Below are positions 3,836-53,058 of a DNA stretch of 53,318 nt, piece after piece. The position numbers and the translations under genes were made by a program. Each line of letters begins with the position of its first letter. The first letter of the stretch is position 1. This stretch comes from Octopus sinensis (taxonomy: Eukaryota), in the NCBI RefSeq assembly GCF_006345805.1, contig NW_021835367.1:1-53318 (forward strand), given 5' to 3'. The notes beneath the pieces were generated by a model. It searched no databases and was not told the origin of the DNA. It saw nothing but the letters and a program-made list of their open reading frames with translations.

Positions 3836-4265
3836 GGATTTTTTCGGTTTGAACGGCAGTTTTTAAAAATAATTTCCACGTAACTAAACATTTTAAAACT
3901 TCGTATACTGGTAGAATGTGTTTACAAAACATCTTTTTCTCTTGGCTTTTTTGAGAAAATTCTATAGTTTGTAAGATATTTGTTGTTTTTCTTCTTCAAT
4001 TTATGCAATTTCAACCAATCAATGACGTCTATTGAGGTAAAAAACCCCATTCTGTGCCGTATGAATATGTCCCTCGTTTAAGAAACAGATTGGGTTTATT
4101 TACATTTCTGAAGAAAAAAAGATACCTTTCACCTAACCCTAACCCTAACTAACCCTAACCCTAAAACAGATTGAAATGCAATAGATCGATACTAGGGTCA
4201 TAATTATGGGTGACAATTTCATATGACACCACTAGAAAAAACTGCCGTTCAAACCGAAAAGATCC
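3836..4265 (+). mobile_element. Non-autonomous TIR element (about 430 bp) containing CCCTAA telomere-like repeats
   Basis: 29-bp TIR GGATCTTTTCGGTTTGAACGGCAGTTTTT (1 mismatch in this copy); flanked by a 20-bp direct repeat CATGCAGGATTTCACATCTC at 3816-3835 and 4266-4285. Confidence 0.9.
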
Positions 4266-5976: not shown

Positions 5977-7047
5977 ATATATATATATATATACATTATA
6001 TAATATATTATACAGGCCTGGCTGTGTGGTAAGAAACTTGCTTCCCACCCACATAGTTCTAGGTTCAGTACCACTGTATGGCACCTTGGGCAAGTACCTT
6101 TTACAAAAGTCTCAGGGCGAAATGGATTTAGTAGACGGAAACTGAAAGAAGCCTGTCGTATGTGTGTGTGGTGGGGGAGCACACACACGCACGCACACAT
6201 ATATGACTGGCTTGTTTCCGTCCATCAAATCCACTCACAAGGCTTTGGCCGACTGAAACGTTAGTAGAATACACCCCAGGTGCCACGCAATGGGACTGAA
6301 CCTAGAACCATGTGGTTGGGAGGCAAGCTTCTACAAGATAAGTACGAAACGCTTCACGAATTTGCGTGGCCCCTCTAGCAGGGACCATGCTAATGTCTGT
6401 GTCGTTCGAATTTTAGTACATACACACACACACACAAACACACATACACGCAACACACACACACAACACACACACACACACGCACACACACACGTAAAGT
6501 AATTATATGTGTATCTATAACATTAATGTACTTAAAGAAGCAACTATATATATATCTGTATGCGTACATAAATACACACGCGCACACACGCATATATATA
6601 TGAATATATATGTATGTATATATAAACACACACATATATAATTATATATGCATATATATATATGTATGTATGTATGTATGTGTATACATGTGTTGTGTAT
6701 AGAGTGCATTTAATTCTCTCACAAACTTTCCTACTCTCTCTTCCTATGTATGTATGTATGTATGTATGTATGTATGTATGTATGTATGTATGTATGTATG
6801 TATGTATGTATGTATGTATGTATTTACGTACGTACGTACATACATACATATATACATAAATACATACATATATACATACTTACATGCATAAATATATATA
6901 CACATATACGTTATGTATCTGTATGTATGCAAAGAATTAGATACCAATTTTGCTGAGATATTGACACCACCCAAAAATGCATTCCCCGGCGTAACGTCCA
7001 GTACACACACACATCCCAACATATTCACAAAACTATAACGATATATA

Positions 7048-10088: not shown

Positions 10089-11225
10089 CTATTCCCATAT
10101 TAATTGACATTCCTCCATATTTCCCCACCTTTCCTCACATTTCTCCATATATCCTTTAATTTCCCATATAACCCCATATTTCCCCATATATCTCCATATT
10201 CCCTCTTCATATATTCCTTCTCCATATTTCCTCATATTTCTCCACCGTGTTTCCTTATTTCTTCTACATTTTCCCATATTTCCCATATATCTCCATATTC
10301 CACCATATTCCCTCTTCATATTTCTTCTCCATATTTCCCCACCATGTTTCCCTATTTCTTCTCCATATTTCCTCATATTTCCCCACCGTGTTTCCCTATT
10401 TCTTCTACCATTTCCCCATATATCTCCATATTCCTCCATATTGCCTCATATTTCCCCACCATGTTTCCTTATTTCATCTATATTTTCCCCATATATCTCC
10501 ATACTCTTCAATATTCCCTCTCCATATTTCTTCTCCATATTTCCTCATATTTCCCCACCGTGTTTCCCTATTTCTTCTACATTTCCCCATATATCTCCAT
10601 ATTCCTCCATATTCCCTCTCCATATTTCTTCTCCATATTTCCTCATATTTCCCCACCGTGTTTCCCTATTTCTTCCACATTTCCCCATATTTCCCTATAT
10701 ATCTCCATATTCCTCCATATTCCCTCTCCATATTTCTTCTCCATATTTCCTCATATTTCCCCACCGTGTTTCCCTATTTCTTCTACATTTCCCCATATTT
10801 CCCTATATATCTCCATATTCCTCCATATTACCCACCACACACACATTTCTCCATATTTCCTCATGGCGGTGCCCCAGCATGACCACAGCTCGTGAGCTGA
10901 AACTAGATAAAATAAATATTTCCCCACCGTGTTTCGCTATTTCTTTTACATTTCCCCATATTTCCCCATATAACTCCTTATTCCTTCTTCATATTTCTTC
11001 TCCATATTTCCTTATATTTCCTTATATTCCCCACCGTGTTTCCCTATTTCCATTACATTTCCCAATATTTTCCCATATTTTCTCGTTTCACGATATTTCC
11101 CCTCATTTCCCATATTTCTCAATATTTCCCTATTTCCTTATTCTACCCAGCTACATTCTCCAATATTCCTAATATCTTTCCACATTTCCTCACATTTCCC
11201 CATATTTCCCCATATTTCCCTATAT
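10089..11225. repeat. Pyrimidine-rich minisatellite of about 10-bp TTTCCCCATA subunits with a 98-108 bp higher-order unit
   Basis: Marker CCCCACCGTGTTTCCCTATTTC recurs at 10553, 10651 and 10759. Confidence 0.9.
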
Positions 11226-14339: not shown

Positions 14340-14713
14340 GGATCTTTTCGGTTTGAACGGCAGTTTTTTCTAGCGGTGTCATATGAAATTGTCACCCATA
14401 ATTATGACCCTAGTATCGATCTATTGCATTTAAATCTGTTTTAGGGTTGGGGTTAGTTAGGGTTAGGGGTGGGGGAAGGGTATCTTTTTTTTCTTCCCAA
14501 ATGTAAATAAACCCAATTTGTTTCTGAAACGAGGGACATATTCATACGGCACAGAATGCTTTTTAACTCAATAGACGTCACTGATTGGTTGAAATTGCAG
14601 AAATTGAAGAAAACAACAACAAATATCTTACAAATTACCAGTATACGAAGTTAAAAATTTTTTAGTTACCGACAAATTAATGTTAAACACAGCCGTTCAA
14701 ACCGAAAAGATCC
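14340..14713 (-). mobile_element. Telomere-repeat TIR element, internally deleted, inserted in a family C SINE
   Basis: Same TIR as the 3836 copy; flanking CCGCTG at 14334-14339 and 14714-14719. Confidence 0.9.
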
Positions 14714-17259: not shown

Positions 17260-17344
<85 letters not shown>

Positions 17345-17349
17345 GTCCG

Positions 17350-17412
<63 letters not shown>

Positions 17413-17492
17413 GTCTGGCTGTCTGTCAATCTATCTATCTATCTGTCTGGCTGTCTGTCAATCTATCTATCTATCAGTCTGGCTGTCTGTCA

Positions 17493-17552
<60 letters not shown>
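17258..17552. repeat. (CTAT)n tetranucleotide repeat; (TCTG)n/(TATG)n at 21229-21700
   Basis: Seen directly. Confidence 0.95.
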
Positions 17553-17553
<1 letters not shown>

Positions 17554-17863
17554 GTTAGGGTTAGGGGTGGGGGAAGGGTATCTTTTTTTCTTCACAAATG
17601 TAAATAAACCCAATCTGCTTCTTAAACGAGGGACATATTCATACGGCACAGAATGCTTTCACCTCAATAGACGGTCAGTGATTGGTTAAAATTGCCGAAA
17701 TGCAAGAAATTAAAGACGAAATATGTTACAAAATACAGAATTTTCTCAAGAAAGCCAAGAGAAAATGATGTTTTATAAACACATTCTACCAGTATACGAA
17801 GTTTAAAATTTTTTAGTTACCTAGAGATTATGTTAAAAACTGCCGTTCAAACCGAAAAGATCC
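17553..17863 (-). mobile_element. Telomere-repeat TIR element, one end missing
   Basis: AGTTAGGGTTAGGGG... to AAAAACTGCCGTTCAAACCGAAAAGATCC. Confidence 0.85.
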
Positions 17864-17899
17864 ATATATATGTGTGTGTATCTTTATGCATGTATATAC

Positions 17900-17967
<68 letters not shown>

Positions 17968-18215
17968 CTTGCGTGTGTGCGTGTGTGTGTAACCAAAACG
18001 GATATAAATGTATATAACAAGGAAATATGTGTCAGTTTCGATATCAGTCTGTCTGTGTTGCACTATTTGACCTCTGTGACTTCAGCGATTGTCATCTACT
18101 CTTGACACGCCGACTTGTGCATATGAGTGCACATGTCAGCCCTTTATGAGTCGACAGGTGCATCTATCGTTGCACTCAGTAAATGCACCTAACATTGAAA
18201 TGCAAATGCGTTTCT

Positions 18216-18753
18216 ATACCTCGAAACTCGAGTCCGTGTGTATCATAAGTTGAAGACGGGAAGGATGACTTCCCTTTGCAAATACTGACAGGACACAGAT
18301 AGTGTGTCTATGGCCAGCTGGAGGAGTGTGTCCTCCTGGGGCTAAAAACTACAGTAGCATCCACCCTTAGGGGTTAGCCATATTGAAATGGCAAAAATAC
18401 GTCACGATGTGTTACCGCTACTGTATATAACTTACTTTGATATTTATCATTGTTTGATTTCACTTTTTCAATATCAGCGACAGTGGACGTGGAAAAATTA
18501 TAAGTATTTGTGAAGGAAATCTAATTCTCGGCGACAACTATGATTGTCACACGCTGACGAGAGGTCAATACCTCGAAACTCGAGTCCGTGTGTATCATAA
18601 GTTGAAGACGGAAGGATGACTTCCCTTTGCAAATACTGACAGGACAGATAGTGTGTCTATGGCCAGCTGGAGGAGTGTGTCCTCCTGGGGCTAAAAACTA
18701 CAGTAGCATCACCCTTAGGGGTTAGCCATATTGAAATGGCAAAAATACGTCAC

Positions 18754-18754
<1 letters not shown>
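18216..18754 (+). mobile_element. Retrozyme-like tandem repeat, 352-bp monomer, about 1.5 copies, ending at a (TA)n tract
   Basis: 18216-18406 repeats at 18568-18754 with only small deletions; a hammerhead spans the monomer junction. Confidence 0.85.
18535..18604 (+). ncRNA. Type I hammerhead ribozyme
   Basis: CACACG-CTGACGA-GAGG(TCAATA)CCTC-GAA-AC(TCGA)GT-C/CGTGTG. Conserved core complete; stem I extended by ATGAT/ATCAT and CAACT/AGTTG; predicted cleavage after 18586. Confidence 0.9.
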
Positions 18755-18786
<32 letters not shown>

Positions 18787-19368
18787 CGGGAAGCTTTATG
18801 AAAATAAACAAAAGACGAAGGCAGGTGGAGTACAAACAAACAATTGTATTAGTATGGCGCTCATATACACCTTTGCATATGCATATTTACATAGGCATAG
18901 GCACACCTTTTATTTTTTTATGTTTTACTTGTGTCAGTCATTAGACTGCGGCCTTGCTGATGACCCACTTTGAAGATCTTTAGTCGAATGAATCGACCCC
19001 AGTACATTAAGCCTGGTAATTATTCCATCAGGCTCTTTTGTCGAACCGCGAGATTATGGGGGATATAAACACACCAACACCGGTTGTCAAGCGGTGGTGG
19101 GAGGACAAACAGAGACACAAAGACACACGGCGGGTTTCTTTCAGTTTCCGTCAGCCAAATCTACACACAAGACTTTGATCGACTCTAAGCTACAGAAGAC
19201 ACTTGCTCAAGGTGTCATGCAGTGGGACTGAACCCAGAACGATGTGGTAAGGAAGCAAACATAGACACGCACATATACGCAACTTTATATAGCACAACAA
19301 GCATGTTTAGAACGAATGACTGAAACCTCTACGTGGTCGCTCGAGATGCTAGATATAGTAGCCAGACT

Positions 19369-19785
19369 GGATCTTTTCGGTTTGAACGGCAGTTTTTAAC
19401 ATAATTTCTAGGTAACAAAAAAATTCAAACTTCGTATACTGGTAGAATGTGTTTATAAAACATCTTTTTCTCTTGGCTTTATTGAGAAAATTCTATAGTT
19501 TGTAAGATATTTGTTGTTTTTTTTCTTCAATTTCTGCAATTTCAATCAATCACTGACGTCTATTGAGGTAAAAAAACATTTTTTGCCGTATGAATATGTC
19601 CCTCGTTTAAGAAACAGATTGGGTTTATTTACATTTGTGAAGAAAAAAAGATACCCTTCCAGCCACCCCTAACCCTAACCCTAAAACAGATTGAAATGCA
19701 ATAGATCGATACTAGGGTCATAATTATGGGCGACAATTTCATATGACATCGCTAGAAAAAACTGCTGTTCAAACCGAAAATATCC
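19369..19785 (+). mobile_element. Telomere-repeat TIR element, full length
   Basis: Both TIRs present; flanks GCCAGACT and GCCAACT form an imperfect duplication. Confidence 0.9.
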
Positions 19786-28816: not shown

Positions 28817-29212
28817 GGCGCAAGAGTGGCTCGTGCGGTAAATAGCTTGCTTACCAACCACATGGTTTCGGGTTCAGTCCCACTGCGTGCCACCTTTGGC
28901 AAGTGTCTCTTTCTATAGCCTCGGGCCGACCAAAGCCTTGTGAGTAGGTTTGGTAGGCGGTAACTGAAAGAAGCCTGTCGTATATGTGTGTGTATGTGTG
29001 TGTATGTGTGTGCCTGTGATTGTCCACCCACCATCGCTTGACAACCGATGTGGGTGCGTTTACGTCCCCATAACTTAGCGGTTCGGCATAAGATACCGAT
29101 AGAATAAGTACTAGGCTTACAAAGATTTAGTTCTGGGTTCGATTTGTTCGACTAAAGGCGGTGCTCCAGCATGACCATAGTCAAATGACTGAAACAAAAG
29201 AATAAAAGAATA
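28817..29212 (+). mobile_element. tRNA-derived SINE family C (bipartite, internal microsatellite); other copies near 2556, 6016, 11597, 14290, 18918, 20642, 22440, 25510, 31558, 33099, 34005, 34217, 52021
   Basis: Head GGCGCAAGAGTGGC...GGTTCAGTCCC, core CACCTTTGGCAAGTGTC, tail CGATTTGTTCGACTAAAGGCGGTGCTCCAGCATG...GAATAAAAGAATA. Confidence 0.9.
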
Positions 29213-29484
29213 CACACACACACATATATATATATGTATATATATGTATATATATATACGTATATACACACACCACACACACAACACCACACACACACAC
29301 ACACAACACACACATATATATATATATATATCTATAATATATATATGTATATATAACGAGAAGCTTTATGAAAATAGACAAAAGACGAAGGCAGGTTTAC
29401 GGAAATAAACAAATGACGAAGGCAGGTGGAATACAAACAAACAATCGTATTAGTATGGCGCTCAGGAATATAAATAAAAACAAG

Positions 29485-34778: not shown

Positions 34779-35195
34779 CTCTTTTACTCTTTTACTCATT
34801 TACTTGTTTCAGTCATTTGACTGCGGCCATGCTGGAGCACCGCCTTTAGTCGAGCAAATCGACCCCGGGACTTATTTTTTGTAAGCCCAGTACTTATTCT
34901 ATCGGTCTGTTTTGCCGAACCGCTAAGTGACGGGGACGTAAACACACCAGCATCGGTTGTCAAGCAATGCTAGGGGGACAAGCACAGACACACAAACATA
35001 TACACACTCATTTATATATATATACATATATACGACAGGCTTCTTTCAATTTCCGTCTACCAAATCCACTCACAAGGCATTGGTCGACCCGGGGCTATAG
35101 CAGAAGACACTTGCCCAAGATGCCATGCAGTGGGACTGAACCCGGAACCATGTGGTTGGTTAGCAAGCTACTTACCACACAGCCACTCCTGCGCC
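34779..35195 (-). mobile_element. SINE family C, full length
   Basis: Reverse complement of the 28817 type, with head and tail both present. Confidence 0.9.
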
Positions 35196-39929: not shown

Positions 39930-40972
39930 GTCTTTGCACAGCTTCTAACGCTGGAGATGTACTACGGTGTCATCTGTTCACTACCAGTGAACTAAGGTAA
40001 CACCTCTTATTTTTCGAGCACCTTCTGGAGTATTCGACCGATTCTAAGCAGTGCTATTTTCTGCAAGTGCTCCACTCTTATTGCAGCCCTTATTTGTTGC
40101 ATGTACTTCTCAAGATTTTTACTCACTGTTCCCAGGGTACCGACAATTATTGGTACTACTATCACCTTTTTCATCGACCACAACTACTTAACTTCCCAAG
40201 CTAACCTTTCATATCTCTCGACTTTTCTTTCTTCCTTATCGCATACTTTGTTGTCAGCTGGGCATGCTATATCTATGATCCAGCATAGTTTCTTTTCTTT
40301 CTCAATTAAGACTATGTCTGGCATCCTATTCTCTATCTCATGATCGCACTGAATCATAAAATCCCTCAGGATCTTTGCATTTCTATTTTCGACGATACAT
40401 TCACGTTTATGTTCGTACCAATTTTTTGTTCTGTCAAGTCCATACTTTTGCAAAGTGTCCAATGGACATTCTTTGCTATATTGCCGTGGCGTCTCTTATT
40501 TTCCTTCTGGGCTAGTGGCGTACACTGGCTGGTAATATGCCACACAGTTTCACCATTTTGTCCACAGATCCTGCACTTATCACTTTCTGATGTGTTGTCT
40601 ATTCTGCATTTTATGTAGTTTGTTCTTAGTGCTTGCTCTTAGGCAGCACAGATCATAGCCTCCCTTTTCCGGTTTTAAATCCCTTTTAGTCATCCACAGT
40701 CATCTTTTTTCTCTATCTGTCTTATCTTCAACATCCCTATGAAATTGTCCATGCGTTATTTTCTTTACTCACCTATTTTCAGTTTCATTCTTTTTTAATT
40801 GCTTGTACAGTGTTTTATTTCATCCTACACAAGCCTGACCTTCCTACTTCTAATAATAGCGATTCTACAGCATTTTTACATTCCATGCTATGTTGTTTTA
40901 TTCTGCTCTAATGCTGTGTTTGCATCCAATAAGCCCTCTTCCTCCTCTTTTTCTTGGTACATACACTCTGTC
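39930..40972 (-). pseudogene. 5-prime-truncated non-LTR retrotransposon with restriction-like endonuclease (R4/Dong-like)
   Basis: DRVYVPRKRGGRGL, HGQF, zinc knuckle CRICGQNGETVWHITSQC, MPDIVLIEKEKKLCWIIDIACP (PD..D), 3-prime UTR; (ATT)n on both flanks. Confidence 0.9.
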
Positions 40973-41021
<49 letters not shown>

Positions 41022-41040
41022 GTTGTTGTTGTTGTTGTGT

Positions 41041-43053
41041 TTACAACTTTAGGCCTATAACTCTGCTGAATGCAGAATTCAAAATTTTGGCCAAGGTGTT
41101 AGCTACGTGGTTGGCTCTTGTCGTCGAGGATCTGGTAGGGAAAGCACAAACATGCACGATCTGGAAAAGATCCATCCACGACAACCTCCACCGCCTACGA
41201 AACATCATTGAGAAAGTGGCTAAAGAACCTGGCACGGATGGGGCTCTCATCAGTTTGGATCAGTCTAAAGCTTTCGATAGGATCGACCATCTATGCCTGG
41301 CGGCGGTTCTCAAGGCAGCTGGTTTCGTGTCTGTATTCAGGGGCTGGATCGCTGCAATGCACAGCGACATCTGTTCAGTGGTCAGAGTGAACGGTCGCCG
41401 CTCAGAGCCGTTCAATATCATGCGCTCGATCCGGTAAAGTTGCTTCCTTTCGTCTCTCTTGTACTTACTGACTCTCAAGCCACTACTACACAATCTCTAG
41501 GCGTTGAGAGGAATCCCGCGTGACCTAGGATGTGAGAGATGCGTGTCGGATCGTAGTGGTGTTAGATTATAAACAGAGAAATGATCTGCACCGCTCTCAG
41601 GGAGTACGAGGCGGTTTCACGAGCGACGATTAACCAGGAAAAATCAGTAAGCTTGCGTCTCGGTACCTGGAGAAGCAAGTTCCTGCTGTCGAACTGAGAC
41701 GTTGGGCGCTGGACGGACGGGCCGGTTAAATTGCTCGGGGTCTGGTTCGGTCCGGACCTCCAGATGGACAAAATCTGGGACGAGGTAACGAGCAGCGTGA
41801 CTACTCTCACCCAGAAATGGGCTGAGAGAAAGCTATCCCGGGAAGGTTGGGCAGAAGTGGCTAACGCGTATATCGCGTCCGTCATTTACTATCACTGGAC
41901 CGTCGTGCCTTGCCCCAGTCTGATTTCGCTGGGATTTATACTCTTCTGCCACTTGTGGAAGGGATGCATCTCGATGATCAGGTGGTCTATCAGCTGTCCA
42001 ACATCCGCTGCGTGGTGCTTGGGCTTGCCGTGGTTGATGATTCGCAGACATGCAACGAGACTACATTTCCATTGCTTTCTTGACGATGAACAGGTGTGGT
42101 CGCCGTTCGCCAGACACATATTTCCGCAGCTAGTTTCCTCAACGGAGCTACAGTTCTGGGTAAAACAGAGACCGATGGGGAGCAATTTGGAAAGTGAAAT
42201 GACTTCAAGCGCTCGCAGCCCTCAGCCAATCGGAACGTCCACTTTTATAGCATTTAAAGGAAAATGCGACGACGTTCTTGGGGGTCGAAGAAGATCAGCC
42301 GGTCACTCTTTTCCGAAGAACTTTCGGGATGGGACCGATCGATAATTTCCAAAGTCTCTCGTTTGGCAGTGCTACCGGGGAGCTTTGCCTGTTCGAGATA
42401 AACTTTACAGGCGGCTGAGCGTGTCCGAGATGGTTCTGCATACACTTGTCGAGTGTCCGAGCATTCCTGACCTGTGGGTTCATGTCGAACACCTGCTGTC
42501 GCGTGTAGGACGGATCCGGCTGTCAACTGAATCCATCGTGAAGATCGCCCCACTGCCTTCCTTAACTGGGCAGGAAAGGCTGTGTTTATATGCCTAGTGA
42601 CCATGGCGAAAGAGGTTGTATGATGGATGAGATTGAAGGGGCTGGAGACAAACACTTTTCTCTTTGGCCAATCCCTAATCAACTTCTTGAAGTGTCACTT
42701 GAAAAGAAAGCTAAGAGTAGAGAGGGAAGCGTTGTCTTCTAACCTGTTTGCTGAAAGGTGGATGGAAGTGGCGAGAATGATGCAAGTGAACGGACCTGCC
42801 CTGAGCATACGCCTGTAGTTGAAAAAAAGGAAAAGGAAAAGGAAACTACCCCAAACGTCAGGGTACTCATGGTCTTTATGAGGTTTTTCCATGAGCAGCC
42901 CTCGAACATCTCCTCCCTATTGAGGATTACACGTTCTTGATTTAAAAAAAAATTGTTAGTCTTCTTTACATGCAAAGTCCTCACAACACGCAACACATTT
43001 TAAAAAATTTTGTCCTGTACACCCCACAATGTTTTTCTTAATGTAAACCCTTG
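41041..43053 (+). pseudogene. L1/Tx1-clade LINE ORF2 remnant with 3-prime UTR
   Basis: FRPITLLNAEFKILAKVL, LDQSKAFDRIDH, LLGVWFG, C-terminal LHTLVECP; stops and frameshifts; no YADD motif found. Confidence 0.9.
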
Positions 43054-43055
43054 TA

Positions 43056-44341
43056 TCAGGTCATCCCATAAGTTCTGTCCGATTTTACCTTTTTAAAAAT
43101 TGAATGAAATTTAATAGTATTTCAGAATGATTAATGGAATTAAAAATTATTTTTATGCATTTGCGTACATTTAAACTAATTAAATATTATTTTACAGAAT
43201 AATAGAATTAAAATTTCTTTGATTAAAACCCTTTCTAACGTGGAAGTATCCAAGGAGCATTTGAGGCGCATAATGTATATGAGTACAAAAATGGAAACCC
43301 TGCAGCCGAAGCGACTCGAAACATACACTCAGTTTACGGGGAAATGCCTGAATGAAAGAACTTGCAGAAGATGGTTTGCAAAATTCAGAAGTGGAGATTT
43401 CAGCTTTGACGGTGAAGATCGAACAGGATGTCCAGTTGAGTTTGATGATAAGCTCCTTGAGATGTTACTTGAAGAAAATCCTGCATTATTAGTTGAAGAA
43501 TTGGCAATAAAACTTAGTTCAAACCATACGACTGTTCATCGTCCTCTTCAACAACTTGGAAAAGTTCTTAAACTTGGAAAATGGGTGCCTCATGAATTGT
43601 CCGAAAGCAACCGTAAATCCCGAGTTGACATCTGCTCTTCTCTCCATTCTCGCAAATTCATTTCACCCTTATTTGGATAGACTTGTGACTGGTGACGAAA
43701 AATGGATCTTTTATCGAAATGTTAAACGTCGTAAACAGTGGCTTGGTAAAAGGGAAAAAGATCAACCACAACCGAGGAGGGAACTGCATGGGAAAACGGT
43801 TCTTCTCTCTATCTGTTGGGATTGCAAAGGAGTAAGTCACTTTGAATCGTTACCACCCAATGCAGCAATCAATGTTCAAATCTACTGTCAGCAATTAGAG
43901 TGTTTGAAGCAAGTTTTGAAGAAATAAAGACCCGCTTTAGTGAATCGAAAAGGAGTGATGTTTCATCAGGACAATGCGCGATATAACACTGCAAAGATCA
44001 CATCACAGAAGATGGAAGAGCTTGGTTGGGAAAACATTCCTCATCCACCTTATCCTCCCGACCTTGCATCTTCAGACTACCATTTGTTTCGTAGTTTACA
44101 GAATCATTTGGGGGACATAACTTTCGTAAACCGGGAGGAGGTCGTAACTGACATTTGAGAGTTCTTCGCTTTAAAACCAAAAAAAGTTTTATATTGATTG
44201 GATTAAAAAGCCTGTAAATAAATGGAAGGAAGTCTTAGATAATCAGGTAAATACATTGATGATTAAATTTCAATTAAATATAACATTTGATTACTTGTTT
44301 TCTTTATTCAAAATTCGGACAGAACTTATGGGATGACCTGA
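43056..44341 (+). mobile_element. Full-length mariner transposon (1286 bp), transposase disrupted
   Basis: Perfect 27-bp TIR TCAGGTCATCCCATAAGTTCTGTCCGA, TA TSD; WVPHEL, TGDEKW, HQDNAR and YPPDLASSD motifs in three frames with a stop. Confidence 0.97.
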
Positions 44342-52218: not shown

Positions 52219-53058
52219 CAAAATAATCTGTTGTAATACTTACAACATTTAATAAAATGATGTAGTGCGAAACAATTGTACCAAATTACCGGAGTCATTC
52301 TTGTTGCTTATTTTGATTATAATCACCCCACAAATTTTTATGGATAACACCATACAAAATTCTGGTGCATCTAAATTAAGTACCATATTCATTCGAATCT
52401 AAATTTTTGCTGAACTTATATATATATATATGTTTGTGTGTCTGTGTTTGTCTCCCCAACATCGCTTGACAGCTGATGCTGGTGTGTTTACGTCCCCGTC
52501 AGCTAGCGGTTCGGCAAGAGATACTGATAGAATAAGTACTAGGCTTACAAAGAATAAGTCGTGGGGTCGATTTGCTCGACTGAAGGCGGTGCTCCAGCAT
52601 GGCCGCAGTCAAATGACTGAAACAAATAAAAGAATAAAAGAATATGTATAAACGCACACATATTTATATATTATACAAACACATGCATATGTATACATAA
52701 ACACACACGCACACACACATATGAGAGGTTGTGGTATCCAATATATATATATATATACCCACATACACACACATATATATATAACACAAACACACGCACA
52801 CATATTATGGAGTTGTATATTATTGGTTATGGCATATAACTGATTAGGTTGTTACCATGGGTTTTGTCCTTGGTAATGTTGACAACTCTTTTCAAACATG
52901 CTAGCCGGAAACGCATGGTCTCTTTTATACTAGGGGTAAATATAATCTTGATTCATTCGGTGCGAAAAGTTATAACAGTTTACGGAGAAAGCGAAGAGTA
53001 CCGTCCCACAGTACGATGTCAGTTGTGGTCGAATAGAGTTACTAGTGCGAGTGTATAT

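What the first reader, a model, noticed from the sequence alone, without database searches (positions are those of the whole stretch)
18216..18754. Retrozyme-like element: 352-bp tandem monomer with an intact type I hammerhead ribozyme
Seen: a direct repeat with period 352 bp, present in about 1.5 copies. Across the junction (18535-18604) lies a hammerhead with every core base: CUGACGA, a 4-bp stem II, GAAA and a GUC site. Stem I is 6 bp and extends through an internal loop. There is no ORF. Established: metazoan non-LTR retrozymes are non-coding tandem repeats of a few hundred nt with type I HHRs that self-cleave into monomers forming circular RNAs. Inference: this is a young cephalopod retrozyme insertion yielding a 352-nt RNA (18235-18586). 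I do not know whether this family has been described.
Basis: partly seen in the sequence, partly recalled or inferred. Interest (0 to 1): 0.92.

Follow-up and report, generated by a model that had tools for sequence, protein, structure and literature searches.

The report
Truncated retrozyme copy with hammerhead ribozyme
This is a short, non-coding mobile element of a known animal type (a "retrozyme") that carries one complete self-cutting hammerhead RNA motif; it is a real feature, but an ordinary, 5'-truncated 1.5-unit copy rather than a new kind of element.

Summary
Window 18213-18755 is 1.54 head-to-tail units of a 348-352-nt non-coding sequence. The repeated parts (18213-18406 and 18565-18754) are 97.4% identical. 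A complete canonical type I hammerhead (HHR) lies at 18548-18592, with cleavage after C18586. It scores 32.2 bits on Rfam RF00163, just under the gathering score of 34 (window-wide E = 3.5e-4). My descriptor found it once in the window and once in 300 shuffled windows. The monomer, folded as a circle, is strongly self-paired (z = -5.7). All testable features of metazoan non-LTR retrozymes are met: type I HHR, unit of a few hundred nt, 42% GC, no ORF, no LTR.

- Only one HHR is complete. Copy 1 starts inside HHR loop 2, so the locus fails the criterion of two complete HHRs for an active retrozyme.
- Helix III is a 2-bp stem with a palindromic loop, predicted to work only as a dimer.
- "Cephalopod" could not be verified.
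- No other family copy could be retrieved.

The 3' end abuts (TA)15 and the 5' end is truncated. This fits target-primed, more-than-unit reverse transcription of a circular or multimeric RNA, probably by Penelope-like machinery. It is a new member of a known kind, of modest interest.

The parts
18213..18406 (+). Copy 1 of the repeated part, 5'-truncated. It starts inside HHR loop 2 (contiguous identity from 18216; TC at 18213-18214 also matches). It keeps only the 3' half of the HHR: helix II 3' strand, GAAA, palindrome ACUCGAGU, GUC at 18232-18234 and helix I 3' strand CGUGUG.
18407..18564 (+). Part of the unit that is present once. Its last 17 nt (18548-18564) are the 5' half of the complete HHR.
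18548..18592 (+). Complete canonical type I hammerhead ribozyme. Helix I is CACACG/CGUGUG, the core is CUGACGA...GAAA, helix II is GAGG(U)/(A)CCUC, and helix III is AC/GU with palindromic loop UCGA. The predicted scissile bond lies between C18586 and C18587.
   Evidence: Rfam RF00163 at 32.2 bits. Descriptor scan: 1 hit against 1 in 300 shuffled windows. Double-hammerhead cofold.
18536..18604 (+). Extended helix I that closes the monomer: AACU-AUGAU-(UGU)-CACACG pairs with CGUGUG-(U)-AUCAU-(A)-AGUU.
   Evidence: MFE of 18530-18610; circular monomer fold.
18235..18586 (+). Cleavage-site-to-cleavage-site monomer, 352 nt and 41.8% GC. Predicted circular MFE is -110.4 kcal/mol with 63% of bases paired. 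A unit built from the copy-2 version would be 348 nt.
18565..18755 (+). Copy 2 of the repeated part. The element ends at ...CGTCACG(G), 168-169 nt past the HHR cleavage site.
18756..18785 (.). (TA)15 microsatellite that directly abuts the 3' end of the element. It is the presumed target, and TATA at 18215-18218 sits at the 5' junction. The monomer continues CACG|ATGTGT where the junction reads CACG|GTATAT.
   Evidence: A paralogous flank with (TA)n but no retrozyme lies at 29314-29464.

Best explanation
Window 18213-18755 is a 1.54-unit, 5'-truncated genomic copy of a metazoan non-LTR retrozyme. That is a non-coding, non-autonomous retroelement whose 348-352-nt unit carries one canonical type I hammerhead ribozyme.

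The family life cycle is taken from the literature and was not shown here. Tandem source loci are transcribed into oligomers. HHRs, acting here as dimers through the palindromic helix III, cut after GUC. A host RNA ligase circularises the monomers into a highly self-paired circle. A retrotransposon reverse transcriptase then copies the circle or oligomer for more than one unit into a new site.

This particular locus looks like the product of that last step. Priming appears to have occurred at a (TA)n microsatellite, about 168 nt downstream of the cleavage site in the unit. That position argues against a linear, HHR-processed template primed at its 3' end. Synthesis ran 1.54 times round and stopped inside the second HHR.

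The (TA)n association and the partial-tandem structure point to Penelope-like-element machinery (inferred). With one complete HHR of the dimer-dependent type, the locus is most likely a non-propagating offspring copy. At best it is a weak source of monomer RNA.
For: Shown here:
- A repeat of 1.54 units with 97.4% identity and no substitutions.
- A full-length match to Rfam type I HHR, 32.2 bits, window-wide E = 3.5e-4.
- A descriptor hit that is unique in the window and seen once in 300 shuffled windows.
- HHR dimensions equal to the published canonical metazoan type I HHR: helix I 6 bp, helix II 4 bp, helix III 1-2 bp with a 2-4-nt palindromic loop (PMC4209133). They differ from PLE min-HHRs.
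- Two other, unrelated families from metagenomes keep the same fold with entirely different but complementary helices I and II.
- Helix III as a hairpin costs +2.9 kcal/mol. Two motifs cofold into the double hammerhead at -33.9 against 2 x -14.5 kcal/mol.
- The circular monomer folds at z = -5.7, with 0 of 300 shuffles as stable.
- GC is 41.8%.
- No ORF exceeds 60 codons, and no protein homologue exists for any frame.
- There is no ribozyme on the minus strand.
- The 3' end directly abuts (TA)15. Only 0.7% of window positions lie within 2 nt of the edge of a (TA)>=8 run.

From the literature:
- Retrozyme definition and life cycle, and mussel units of 350-390 bp (PMC7229834, PMC7761336).
- (TA)n insertion bias and partial tandems of PLEs (PMC8557442).
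- Retrozymes as PLE derivatives (bioRxiv 10.64898/2026.07.22.740005).
Against: No second locus of the family could be retrieved. Multi-copy status, tandem source arrays and a consistent 3' end are therefore untested. No expression or cleavage data exist.

The Rfam score is 1.8 bits below the curated threshold. No PLE RT or GIY-YIG ORF is seen among the window's candidate ORFs. The only RT is LINE-like, 22 kb away.

A target-site duplication cannot be defined, because the junctions lie in TA-rich sequence. The (TA)n association rests on a single junction in a window where 2.1% of bases are (TA)n.

Invertebrate retrozyme HHRs are reported to cleave mostly as monomers (PMC7229834), whereas this one is predicted to depend on dimerisation.
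Confidence: 0.78

Rival explanations
1. It is the eroded remnant of a longer tandem (satellite-like) retrozyme array. The array was cut down to 1.5 units by deletion or by neighbouring insertions, rather than arising as a 1.5-unit insertion.
For: Retrozymes occur as arrays ranging from dimers to hundreds of units (PMC7229834; bioRxiv 10.64898/2026.07.22.740005). The window is dense in repeats and microsatellites that could have truncated an array.
Against: The two repeated parts show no substitutions, so little time has passed for erosion. The 3' edge falls exactly on a (TA)15 run. No other fragment of the unit occurs anywhere in the 53 kb.
Confidence: 0.1
2. It is a fragment of an autonomous Penelope-like element: its pseudo-LTR region in partial tandem, with the RT-EN ORF lost.
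For: PLE pLTRs carry type I HHRs and form partial tandems. Retrozymes and pLTRs are sequence-related in Xenopus (bioRxiv 10.64898/2026.07.22.740005; PMC4209133; PMC8557442).
Against: The period is 352 nt rather than an element length of 2-4 kb. The HHR is the canonical form (helix I 6 bp, helix II 4 bp, palindromic helix III). It is not the PLE min-HHR, which has helix II of 7-8 bp, helix I of 4-5 bp and no helix III (PMC4209133). No RT or GIY-YIG ORF lies adjacent.
Confidence: 0.07
3. It arose by DNA-level tandem duplication (replication slippage or unequal exchange) of a solitary, older HHR-bearing monomer. No new retrotransposition event was involved.
For: Any 1.5-unit repeat can arise this way. 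The differences between copies are slippage-type indels.
Against: This does not explain why one edge coincides with a (TA)15 run. It also does not explain why the duplicated unit has the size, composition and rod-like fold of a retrozyme. The HHR-bearing monomer would still need a retrozyme origin.
Confidence: 0.04
4. The HHR match is chance resemblance inside an unrelated repeat.
For: The Rfam score is below the gathering threshold.
Against: Window-wide E = 3.5e-4 across all families. The descriptor found 1 hit in 300 shuffled windows. All 15 core positions are present, helix I is extended, the motif sits at the unit junction, and a double-hammerhead MFE is predicted.
Confidence: 0.01

Closest known systems
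Metazoan non-LTR retrozymes (Cervera & de la Pena 2020, PMC7229834), especially the Mytilus galloprovincialis family with 350-390-bp units
   Same: Type I HHR at the unit junction, unit of about 350 nt, GC below 45%, no ORF, no LTR, PBS or PPT, head-to-tail arrangement, and a predicted highly self-paired circular monomer.
   Different: This locus holds only 1.54 units and one complete HHR. No sequence similarity to any described family could be tested. Copy number and expression are unknown. The HHR is predicted to need dimerisation, whereas most invertebrate retrozyme HHRs are reported to cut as monomers.
Amphibian satellite 2 / axolotl retrozymes (HHR_Amex1 and HHR_Amex2, 330-350-bp units) and the Rfam RF00163 consensus
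   Same: The same HHR layout: 6-bp helix I with an internal loop, 4-bp helix II with a hexaloop ending AUA, and a very short helix III with a palindromic loop that extends into a helix in a dimer. Unit length is nearly identical.
   Different: The helices and the rest of the unit have different sequences. The palindrome is ACUCGAGU rather than the consensus ACGCGCGU. The amphibian elements have tens of thousands of copies, whereas only one locus was seen here.
Penelope-like elements and their pLTR hammerheads (PMC4209133, PMC8557442)
   Same: Type I HHR, partial-tandem insertion structure, and association with (TA)n microsatellites. PLEs are the proposed mobilising machinery.
   Different: There is no RT or GIY-YIG ORF. 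The period is 352 nt. The HHR is canonical, not the minimal PLE variant.
Environmental HHR repeats found here: L003 (Ga0049110, two identical HHRs 662 nt apart) and the Ga0126336 family (L004-L020)
   Same: Identical core and identical helix III palindrome ACUCGAGU. The L003 HHR is 77.5% identical over 40 nt.
   Different: There is no similarity outside the HHR. Helices I and II have different sequences. Unit sizes differ and the hosts are unknown.

Membership tests
Canonical metazoan type I hammerhead ribozyme (Rfam RF00163; definition in PMC4209133) | Conserved catalytic core: C3-U4-G5-A6-N7-G8-A9, G12-A13-A14, A15.1-U16.1 and H17 | tested here: met
   CUGACGA at 18554-18560, GAAA at 18575-18578, and GUC at 18584-18586 with C17 = C18586.
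Canonical metazoan type I hammerhead ribozyme (Rfam RF00163; definition in PMC4209133) | Type I topology: open helix I of about 6 bp, closed helix II of about 4 bp with G10.1-C11.1, and helix III of 1-2 bp with a small palindromic loop | tested here: met
   Helix I is 6 bp with extension, helix II is GAGG/CCUC, and helix III is AC/GU with loop UCGA.
Canonical metazoan type I hammerhead ribozyme (Rfam RF00163; definition in PMC4209133) | Score at or above the Rfam gathering threshold (34 bits) | tested here: not met
   32.2 bits, with E = 3.5e-4 window-wide. Tandem HHRs in L003 reach only 34.9 bits, so the shortfall is marginal.
Canonical metazoan type I hammerhead ribozyme (Rfam RF00163; definition in PMC4209133) | Loop 1 / loop 2 tertiary contacts | not testable with these tools
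   Loop 2 is UCAAUA against the consensus CAAAUA, and an internal loop UGU/U lies 6 bp from the core. This is compatible, but no three-dimensional or kinetic test was possible.
Canonical metazoan type I hammerhead ribozyme (Rfam RF00163; definition in PMC4209133) | Mg2+-dependent self-cleavage | not testable with these tools
   Only thermodynamic prediction is available. The monomeric HHR fold is -7.8 kcal/mol against an alternative MFE of -14.5. The double hammerhead is the cofold MFE.
Metazoan non-LTR retrozyme (PMC7229834; PMC7761336) | Type I HHR inside a short head-to-tail repeat of 150-450 bp | tested here: met
   Period 348-352 nt, 1.54 units, with the HHR across the junction.
Metazoan non-LTR retrozyme (PMC7229834; PMC7761336) | Low GC (below 45-50%), no coding capacity, and no LTR, PBS or PPT | tested here: met
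   GC is 41.8%. ORFs reach at most 44 aa and open frames at most 60 codons. No protein homologue was found. The only repeat is the tandem unit itself.
Metazoan non-LTR retrozyme (PMC7229834; PMC7761336) | Monomer RNA predicted to be highly self-paired | tested here: met
   Circular MFE is -110.4 kcal/mol, z = -5.7, with 63% of bases paired.
Metazoan non-LTR retrozyme (PMC7229834; PMC7761336) | [quoted passage not shown] | tested here: not met
   There is one complete HHR. Copy 1 lacks helix I 5' strand, CUGACGA and helix II 5' strand. The locus is a derivative copy, not an active source locus.
Metazoan non-LTR retrozyme (PMC7229834; PMC7761336) | Multi-copy family in the genome, including tandem arrays | not testable with these tools
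   The source genome is not available. There is no other copy in the window, and nothing was found by protein or DNA routes.
Metazoan non-LTR retrozyme (PMC7229834; PMC7761336) | Expression as linear and circular unit-length RNAs | not testable with these tools
   No transcriptome of the source organism is on hand.
Penelope-like element (autonomous) | ORF with a telomerase-like RT and a GIY-YIG endonuclease between pLTRs | tested here: not met
   No ORF exists in or next to the element. Pfam on 10 window ORFs finds only a LINE-type RVT_1 and a mariner transposase more than 22 kb away.
Penelope-like element (autonomous) | Minimal HHR: helix II of 7-8 bp, helix I of 4-5 bp, no helix III | tested here: not met
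   The HHR here has canonical dimensions (PMC4209133).

The most novel reading that the evidence does not exclude
It would also be a very young insertion whose clean junctions record the integration step: priming of a (TA)n target end on the AUGUGU stretch of a circular retrozyme RNA through A-T and G-T pairing, synthesis 1.54 times round the circle, and microhomology joining at the 5' end. That would be direct single-locus evidence for (TA)n-targeted, PLE-type, rolling-circle reverse transcription of retrozyme circles. In addition, the single complete HHR might cut the truncated upstream site in an enzyme/substrate arrangement, so that even a 1.5-unit copy could release circles.
Probability: 0.25. 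Interest if true: 0.5.

Novelty: new member of a known kind. Interest (0 to 1): 0.3.

Why it matters
Retrozymes are one of only two known natural routes to circular RNA in animals, and which enzyme integrates them is still open. A recent copy with readable junctions adds one data point in favour of Penelope-like, microsatellite-targeted integration from a more-than-unit template. If the host really is a cephalopod, the family would extend the known host range within molluscs. It would also offer a compact natural ribozyme cassette for circRNA expression in that lineage. On its own, one truncated copy changes nothing fundamental.

Tried and rejected
(1) Same-family copies elsewhere were not found by any route.
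- Exact look-ups of two ORFs overlapping the element returned nothing.
- A homology search with all nine open frames of an idealised multimer, concatenated, gave 2331 word-sharing candidates but none at E <= 1.
- A metagenome scan with a family-tolerant HHR pattern returned 18 loci, all from other HHR families.
- The viral-contig scan returned 0 loci.
- The bacterial/archaeal genome collection was not scanned, because it cannot hold an animal repeat.

(2) The source taxon could not be identified.
- Four window ORFs are not on record.
- The best relatives of the LINE RT fragment are 56% identical, in unnamed ENA sample ERZ21867824.
- The mariner transposase is 81% identical to a Logan contig of SRR20902413.
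- None of these accessions occurs in the held literature.

(3) I first suspected that the large inverted repeat around the element (17572-17864 and 19368-19660) marked a carrier transposon or a PLE-style inverted copy. I rejected this. It is two of four window copies of a 310-nt interspersed repeat, 90.7% identical to each other and unrelated to the unit.

(4) I searched for an empty-site paralogue. The right flank has a paralogue at 29356-29464, also preceded by (TA)n. The left flank is unique, so the empty site could not be reconstructed.

(5) No tRNA-like head and no composition anomaly were found.

(6) The many miRNA 'hits' in the E-value Rfam scan are microsatellite artefacts.

Full report
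**Observation**

The sequence at 18213-18755 consists of three segments:
- a 194-nt segment at 18213-18406;
- a 158-nt segment present once at 18407-18564;
- a second copy of the first segment at 18565-18754.

The two copies are 97.4% identical over 194 aligned positions (alignment; the repeat finder). Their only internal differences are three indels of 1, 2 and 1 nt in short runs (GGG/GG, ACAC/AC, CC/C). No substitution occurs from 18216 on. Start-to-start spacing therefore drifts from 352 to 348 nt, and the locus holds 1.54 units. Tandem Repeats Finder misses it, as expected below two copies. No other copy of the unit lies in the 53-kb window.

**The ribozyme**

At default thresholds Rfam finds only a U6-like sequence in the window. 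With E-value thresholds, RF00163 (type I hammerhead) matches 18548-18592 on the + strand over the whole model at 32.2 bits. E is 5.2e-6 on 801 nt and 3.5e-4 on the whole window against all families. It is the only ribozyme hit on either strand.

The score is 1.8 bits under the gathering score. This is not disqualifying, for two reasons:
- two identical HHRs 662 nt apart in metagenome contig L003 reach only 34.9 bits;
- a 16-contig HHR family is not listed at E < 0.01 at all in the three of its contigs that I scanned.

My own descriptor required the core, helix I of at least 5 bp, helix II of at least 4 bp and helix III of at least 2 bp. It hits once in the window, at exactly these coordinates, and once in 300 dinucleotide-shuffled windows.

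The anatomy is:
- CACACG | CUGACGA | GAGG-UCAAUA-CCUC | GAAA | AC-UCGA-GU | C (cut) | CGUGUG
- Helix I continues through a UGU/U internal loop into AUGAU/AUCAU and AACU/AGUU.

These are the dimensions given for canonical metazoan type I HHRs: helix I 6 bp, helix II 4 bp, helix III 1-2 bp capped by a 2-4-nt palindromic loop (PMC4209133). They are not those of the minimal PLE variants, which have helix II of 7-8 bp, helix I of 4-5 bp and no helix III.

Three unrelated families share the fold while helices I and II differ completely in sequence yet stay complementary. They are this one, L003, and the Ga0126336 family.

**How the ribozyme probably works**

- Helix III as an intramolecular hairpin is predicted to cost +2.9 kcal/mol.
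- The monomeric hammerhead fold is -7.8 kcal/mol, less stable than an alternative fold at -14.5.
- Two 45-nt motifs cofold, as the minimum-energy structure, into the classical double hammerhead. It has an 8-bp palindromic helix III (ACUCGAGU) and scores -33.9 kcal/mol against -29.0 for two separate molecules.

This is the newt/axolotl type of behaviour (PMC6155905, PMC7229834). It means efficient cleavage is expected in oligomeric transcripts of tandem arrays.

**The unit**

- The cleavage-to-cleavage monomer (18235-18586) is 352 nt with 41.8% GC.
- It has no ORF above 44 aa, and open frames of at most 60 codons in an idealised multimer.
- None of its frames has a homologue among 5.8 billion proteins.
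- Folded as a circle it reaches -110.4 kcal/mol with 63% of bases paired. This gives z = -5.7 against 300 dinucleotide shuffles, none as stable.
- Microsatellite-rich genomic windows of the same length fold equally well in 8% of cases.

These are the published hallmarks of metazoan non-LTR retrozymes: a type I HHR, units of 150-450 bp, low GC, no LTR, PBS or PPT, and highly self-paired circles. The mussel units are 350-390 bp (PMC7229834, PMC7761336).

**What this locus is**

Copy 1 begins inside HHR loop 2. It keeps the substrate half (helix II 3' strand, GAAA, the palindrome, GUC at 18232-18234 and CGUGUG). It lacks helix I 5' strand, CUGACGA and helix II 5' strand. The locus thus has one complete HHR and fails the working definition of an active retrozyme, which is at least 2 consecutive units with complete HHRs (bioRxiv 10.64898/2026.07.22.740005). 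That preprint regards such derivatives as offspring that cannot transpose further.

It is not excluded either. The minimum-energy cofold of the complete HHR region with the truncated copy is an enzyme/substrate hammerhead. In it the complete copy's catalytic strand pairs with the truncated copy's palindrome and CGUGUG. It scores -38.9 against -32.7 kcal/mol for the two apart. This structure is not the MFE of the whole 543-nt transcript.

**Junctions (inference from one locus)**

- The 3' end (...CGTCACG, G at 18755) abuts (TA)15 at 18756-18785.
- Only 0.7% of window positions lie within 2 nt of the edge of a (TA)>=8 run, and 2.4% lie in or next to one.
- The (TA)n was probably there beforehand. 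The 75-nt sequence following it has a paralogue at 29356-29464 that is also preceded by (TA)n but carries no retrozyme.
- In the unit, CGTCACG is followed by ATGTGT. At the junction it is followed by GTATAT, the same purine-T alternation. A (TA)n DNA end could therefore anneal to AUGUGU with A-T and G-T pairs and prime reverse transcription.
- The 5' junction carries TATA (18215-18218), overlapping ATA of the unit.
- The 3' end lies 168 nt past the cleavage site. That position argues against a linear, HHR-processed template primed at its end. It favours a circular or oligomeric template copied for more than one unit, as the retrozyme model proposes (PMC7229834, PMC7761336, PMC4209133).
- A (TA)n insertion bias, partial tandems and unclear target-site duplications are properties reported for Penelope-like elements (PMC8557442). 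PLEs are the proposed mobilisers and relatives of animal retrozymes (bioRxiv 10.64898/2026.07.22.740005).
- No PLE ORF is in the window. Pfam on ten candidate ORFs finds only a LINE-type RT fragment (40799-41434) and a frameshifted mariner (43180-44155).

**Surroundings**

The inverted repeat framing the region (about 17555-17864 and 19368-19684) is two of four window copies of a 310-nt interspersed repeat. That repeat begins with TTAGGG repeats, and the two copies are 90.7% identical to each other. It has nothing to do with the unit. Downstream lies a SINE-like repeat with at least 10 diverged copies in the window. The 222 nt upstream (17991-18212) is unique.

**What could not be done**

No second copy of the family was retrievable. 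Family size, source arrays and conservation of the HHR within the family are therefore untested.

The organism was not identified. The window is clearly animal-like: it holds a U6-like sequence, LINE and mariner fragments and TTAGGG-type repeats.

The held literature has no paper describing hammerheads or retrozymes in cephalopods. However, the 2020 survey scanned RefSeq invertebrate genomes in bulk (PMC7229834).

**Verdict**

This is a real feature and a new member of a known kind. It is an ordinary, recently made, 5'-truncated retrozyme copy, and its interest is modest. Its junctions are suggestive of how it integrated.

Noticed in passing
window 17555-17864 (+), 19368-19684 (-), 3836-4148 (-), 14457-14713 (+): An interspersed repeat of about 310 nt whose 5' end is two or three TTAGGG units. 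There are four near-full copies in the window, 74-91% identical. Two of them form a 1.5-kb-spaced inverted pair around the retrozyme. It looks SINE-like, but the family is unknown.
   Followed up: partly
window 6338-6439 (-): A U6 snRNA-like sequence at 46.1 bits, just above the gathering score of 44. Its 5' stem is replaced by a GU repeat and it has a 3-nt internal deletion. It is probably a U6 pseudogene or retrocopy.
   Followed up: no
window 40799-41434 and 41698-42342 (+): A LINE-type reverse transcriptase fragment (Pfam RVT_1). Its best relatives are only 56% identical, on long contigs of unnamed ENA sample ERZ21867824.
   Followed up: partly
window 43180-44155 (+): A frameshifted Mos1/mariner transposase spread over three frames (HTH_48, Transposase_1). 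It is 81% identical at protein level to an intact 342-aa copy on a Logan contig of SRR20902413.
   Followed up: partly
window 18908-19260, with copies at 28847-29212, 34781-35156, 52431-52644 and others: A SINE-like repeat of about 350 nt with at least 10 diverged copies (68-81% identity) across the window.
   Followed up: no
window 18789-18863 and 29356-29464: A 75-nt unit (AACGGGAAGCTTTATG...GGCGCTCA) recurs at 29.4 kb, where it carries an internal 31-nt duplication. At both sites it is directly preceded by a (TA)n run.
   Followed up: partly
L004-L020 (Ga0126336, Ga0099820) and L003 (Ga0049110): Metagenome contigs carry type I hammerheads with the same helix III palindrome ACUCGAGU. One is a multi-contig family with helix I GAGCAA/UUGCUU. 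The other is a contig with two identical HHRs 662 nt apart (Rfam 34.9 bits), which looks retrozyme-like. The hosts are unknown.
   Followed up: partly
window 17260-17553; 10100-11200: A (TATC)73 microsatellite lies just upstream of the region. Separately, a roughly 1-kb stretch gives long repetitive ORFs in several frames (ISPYFP-like translations). That suggests a minisatellite.
   Followed up: no
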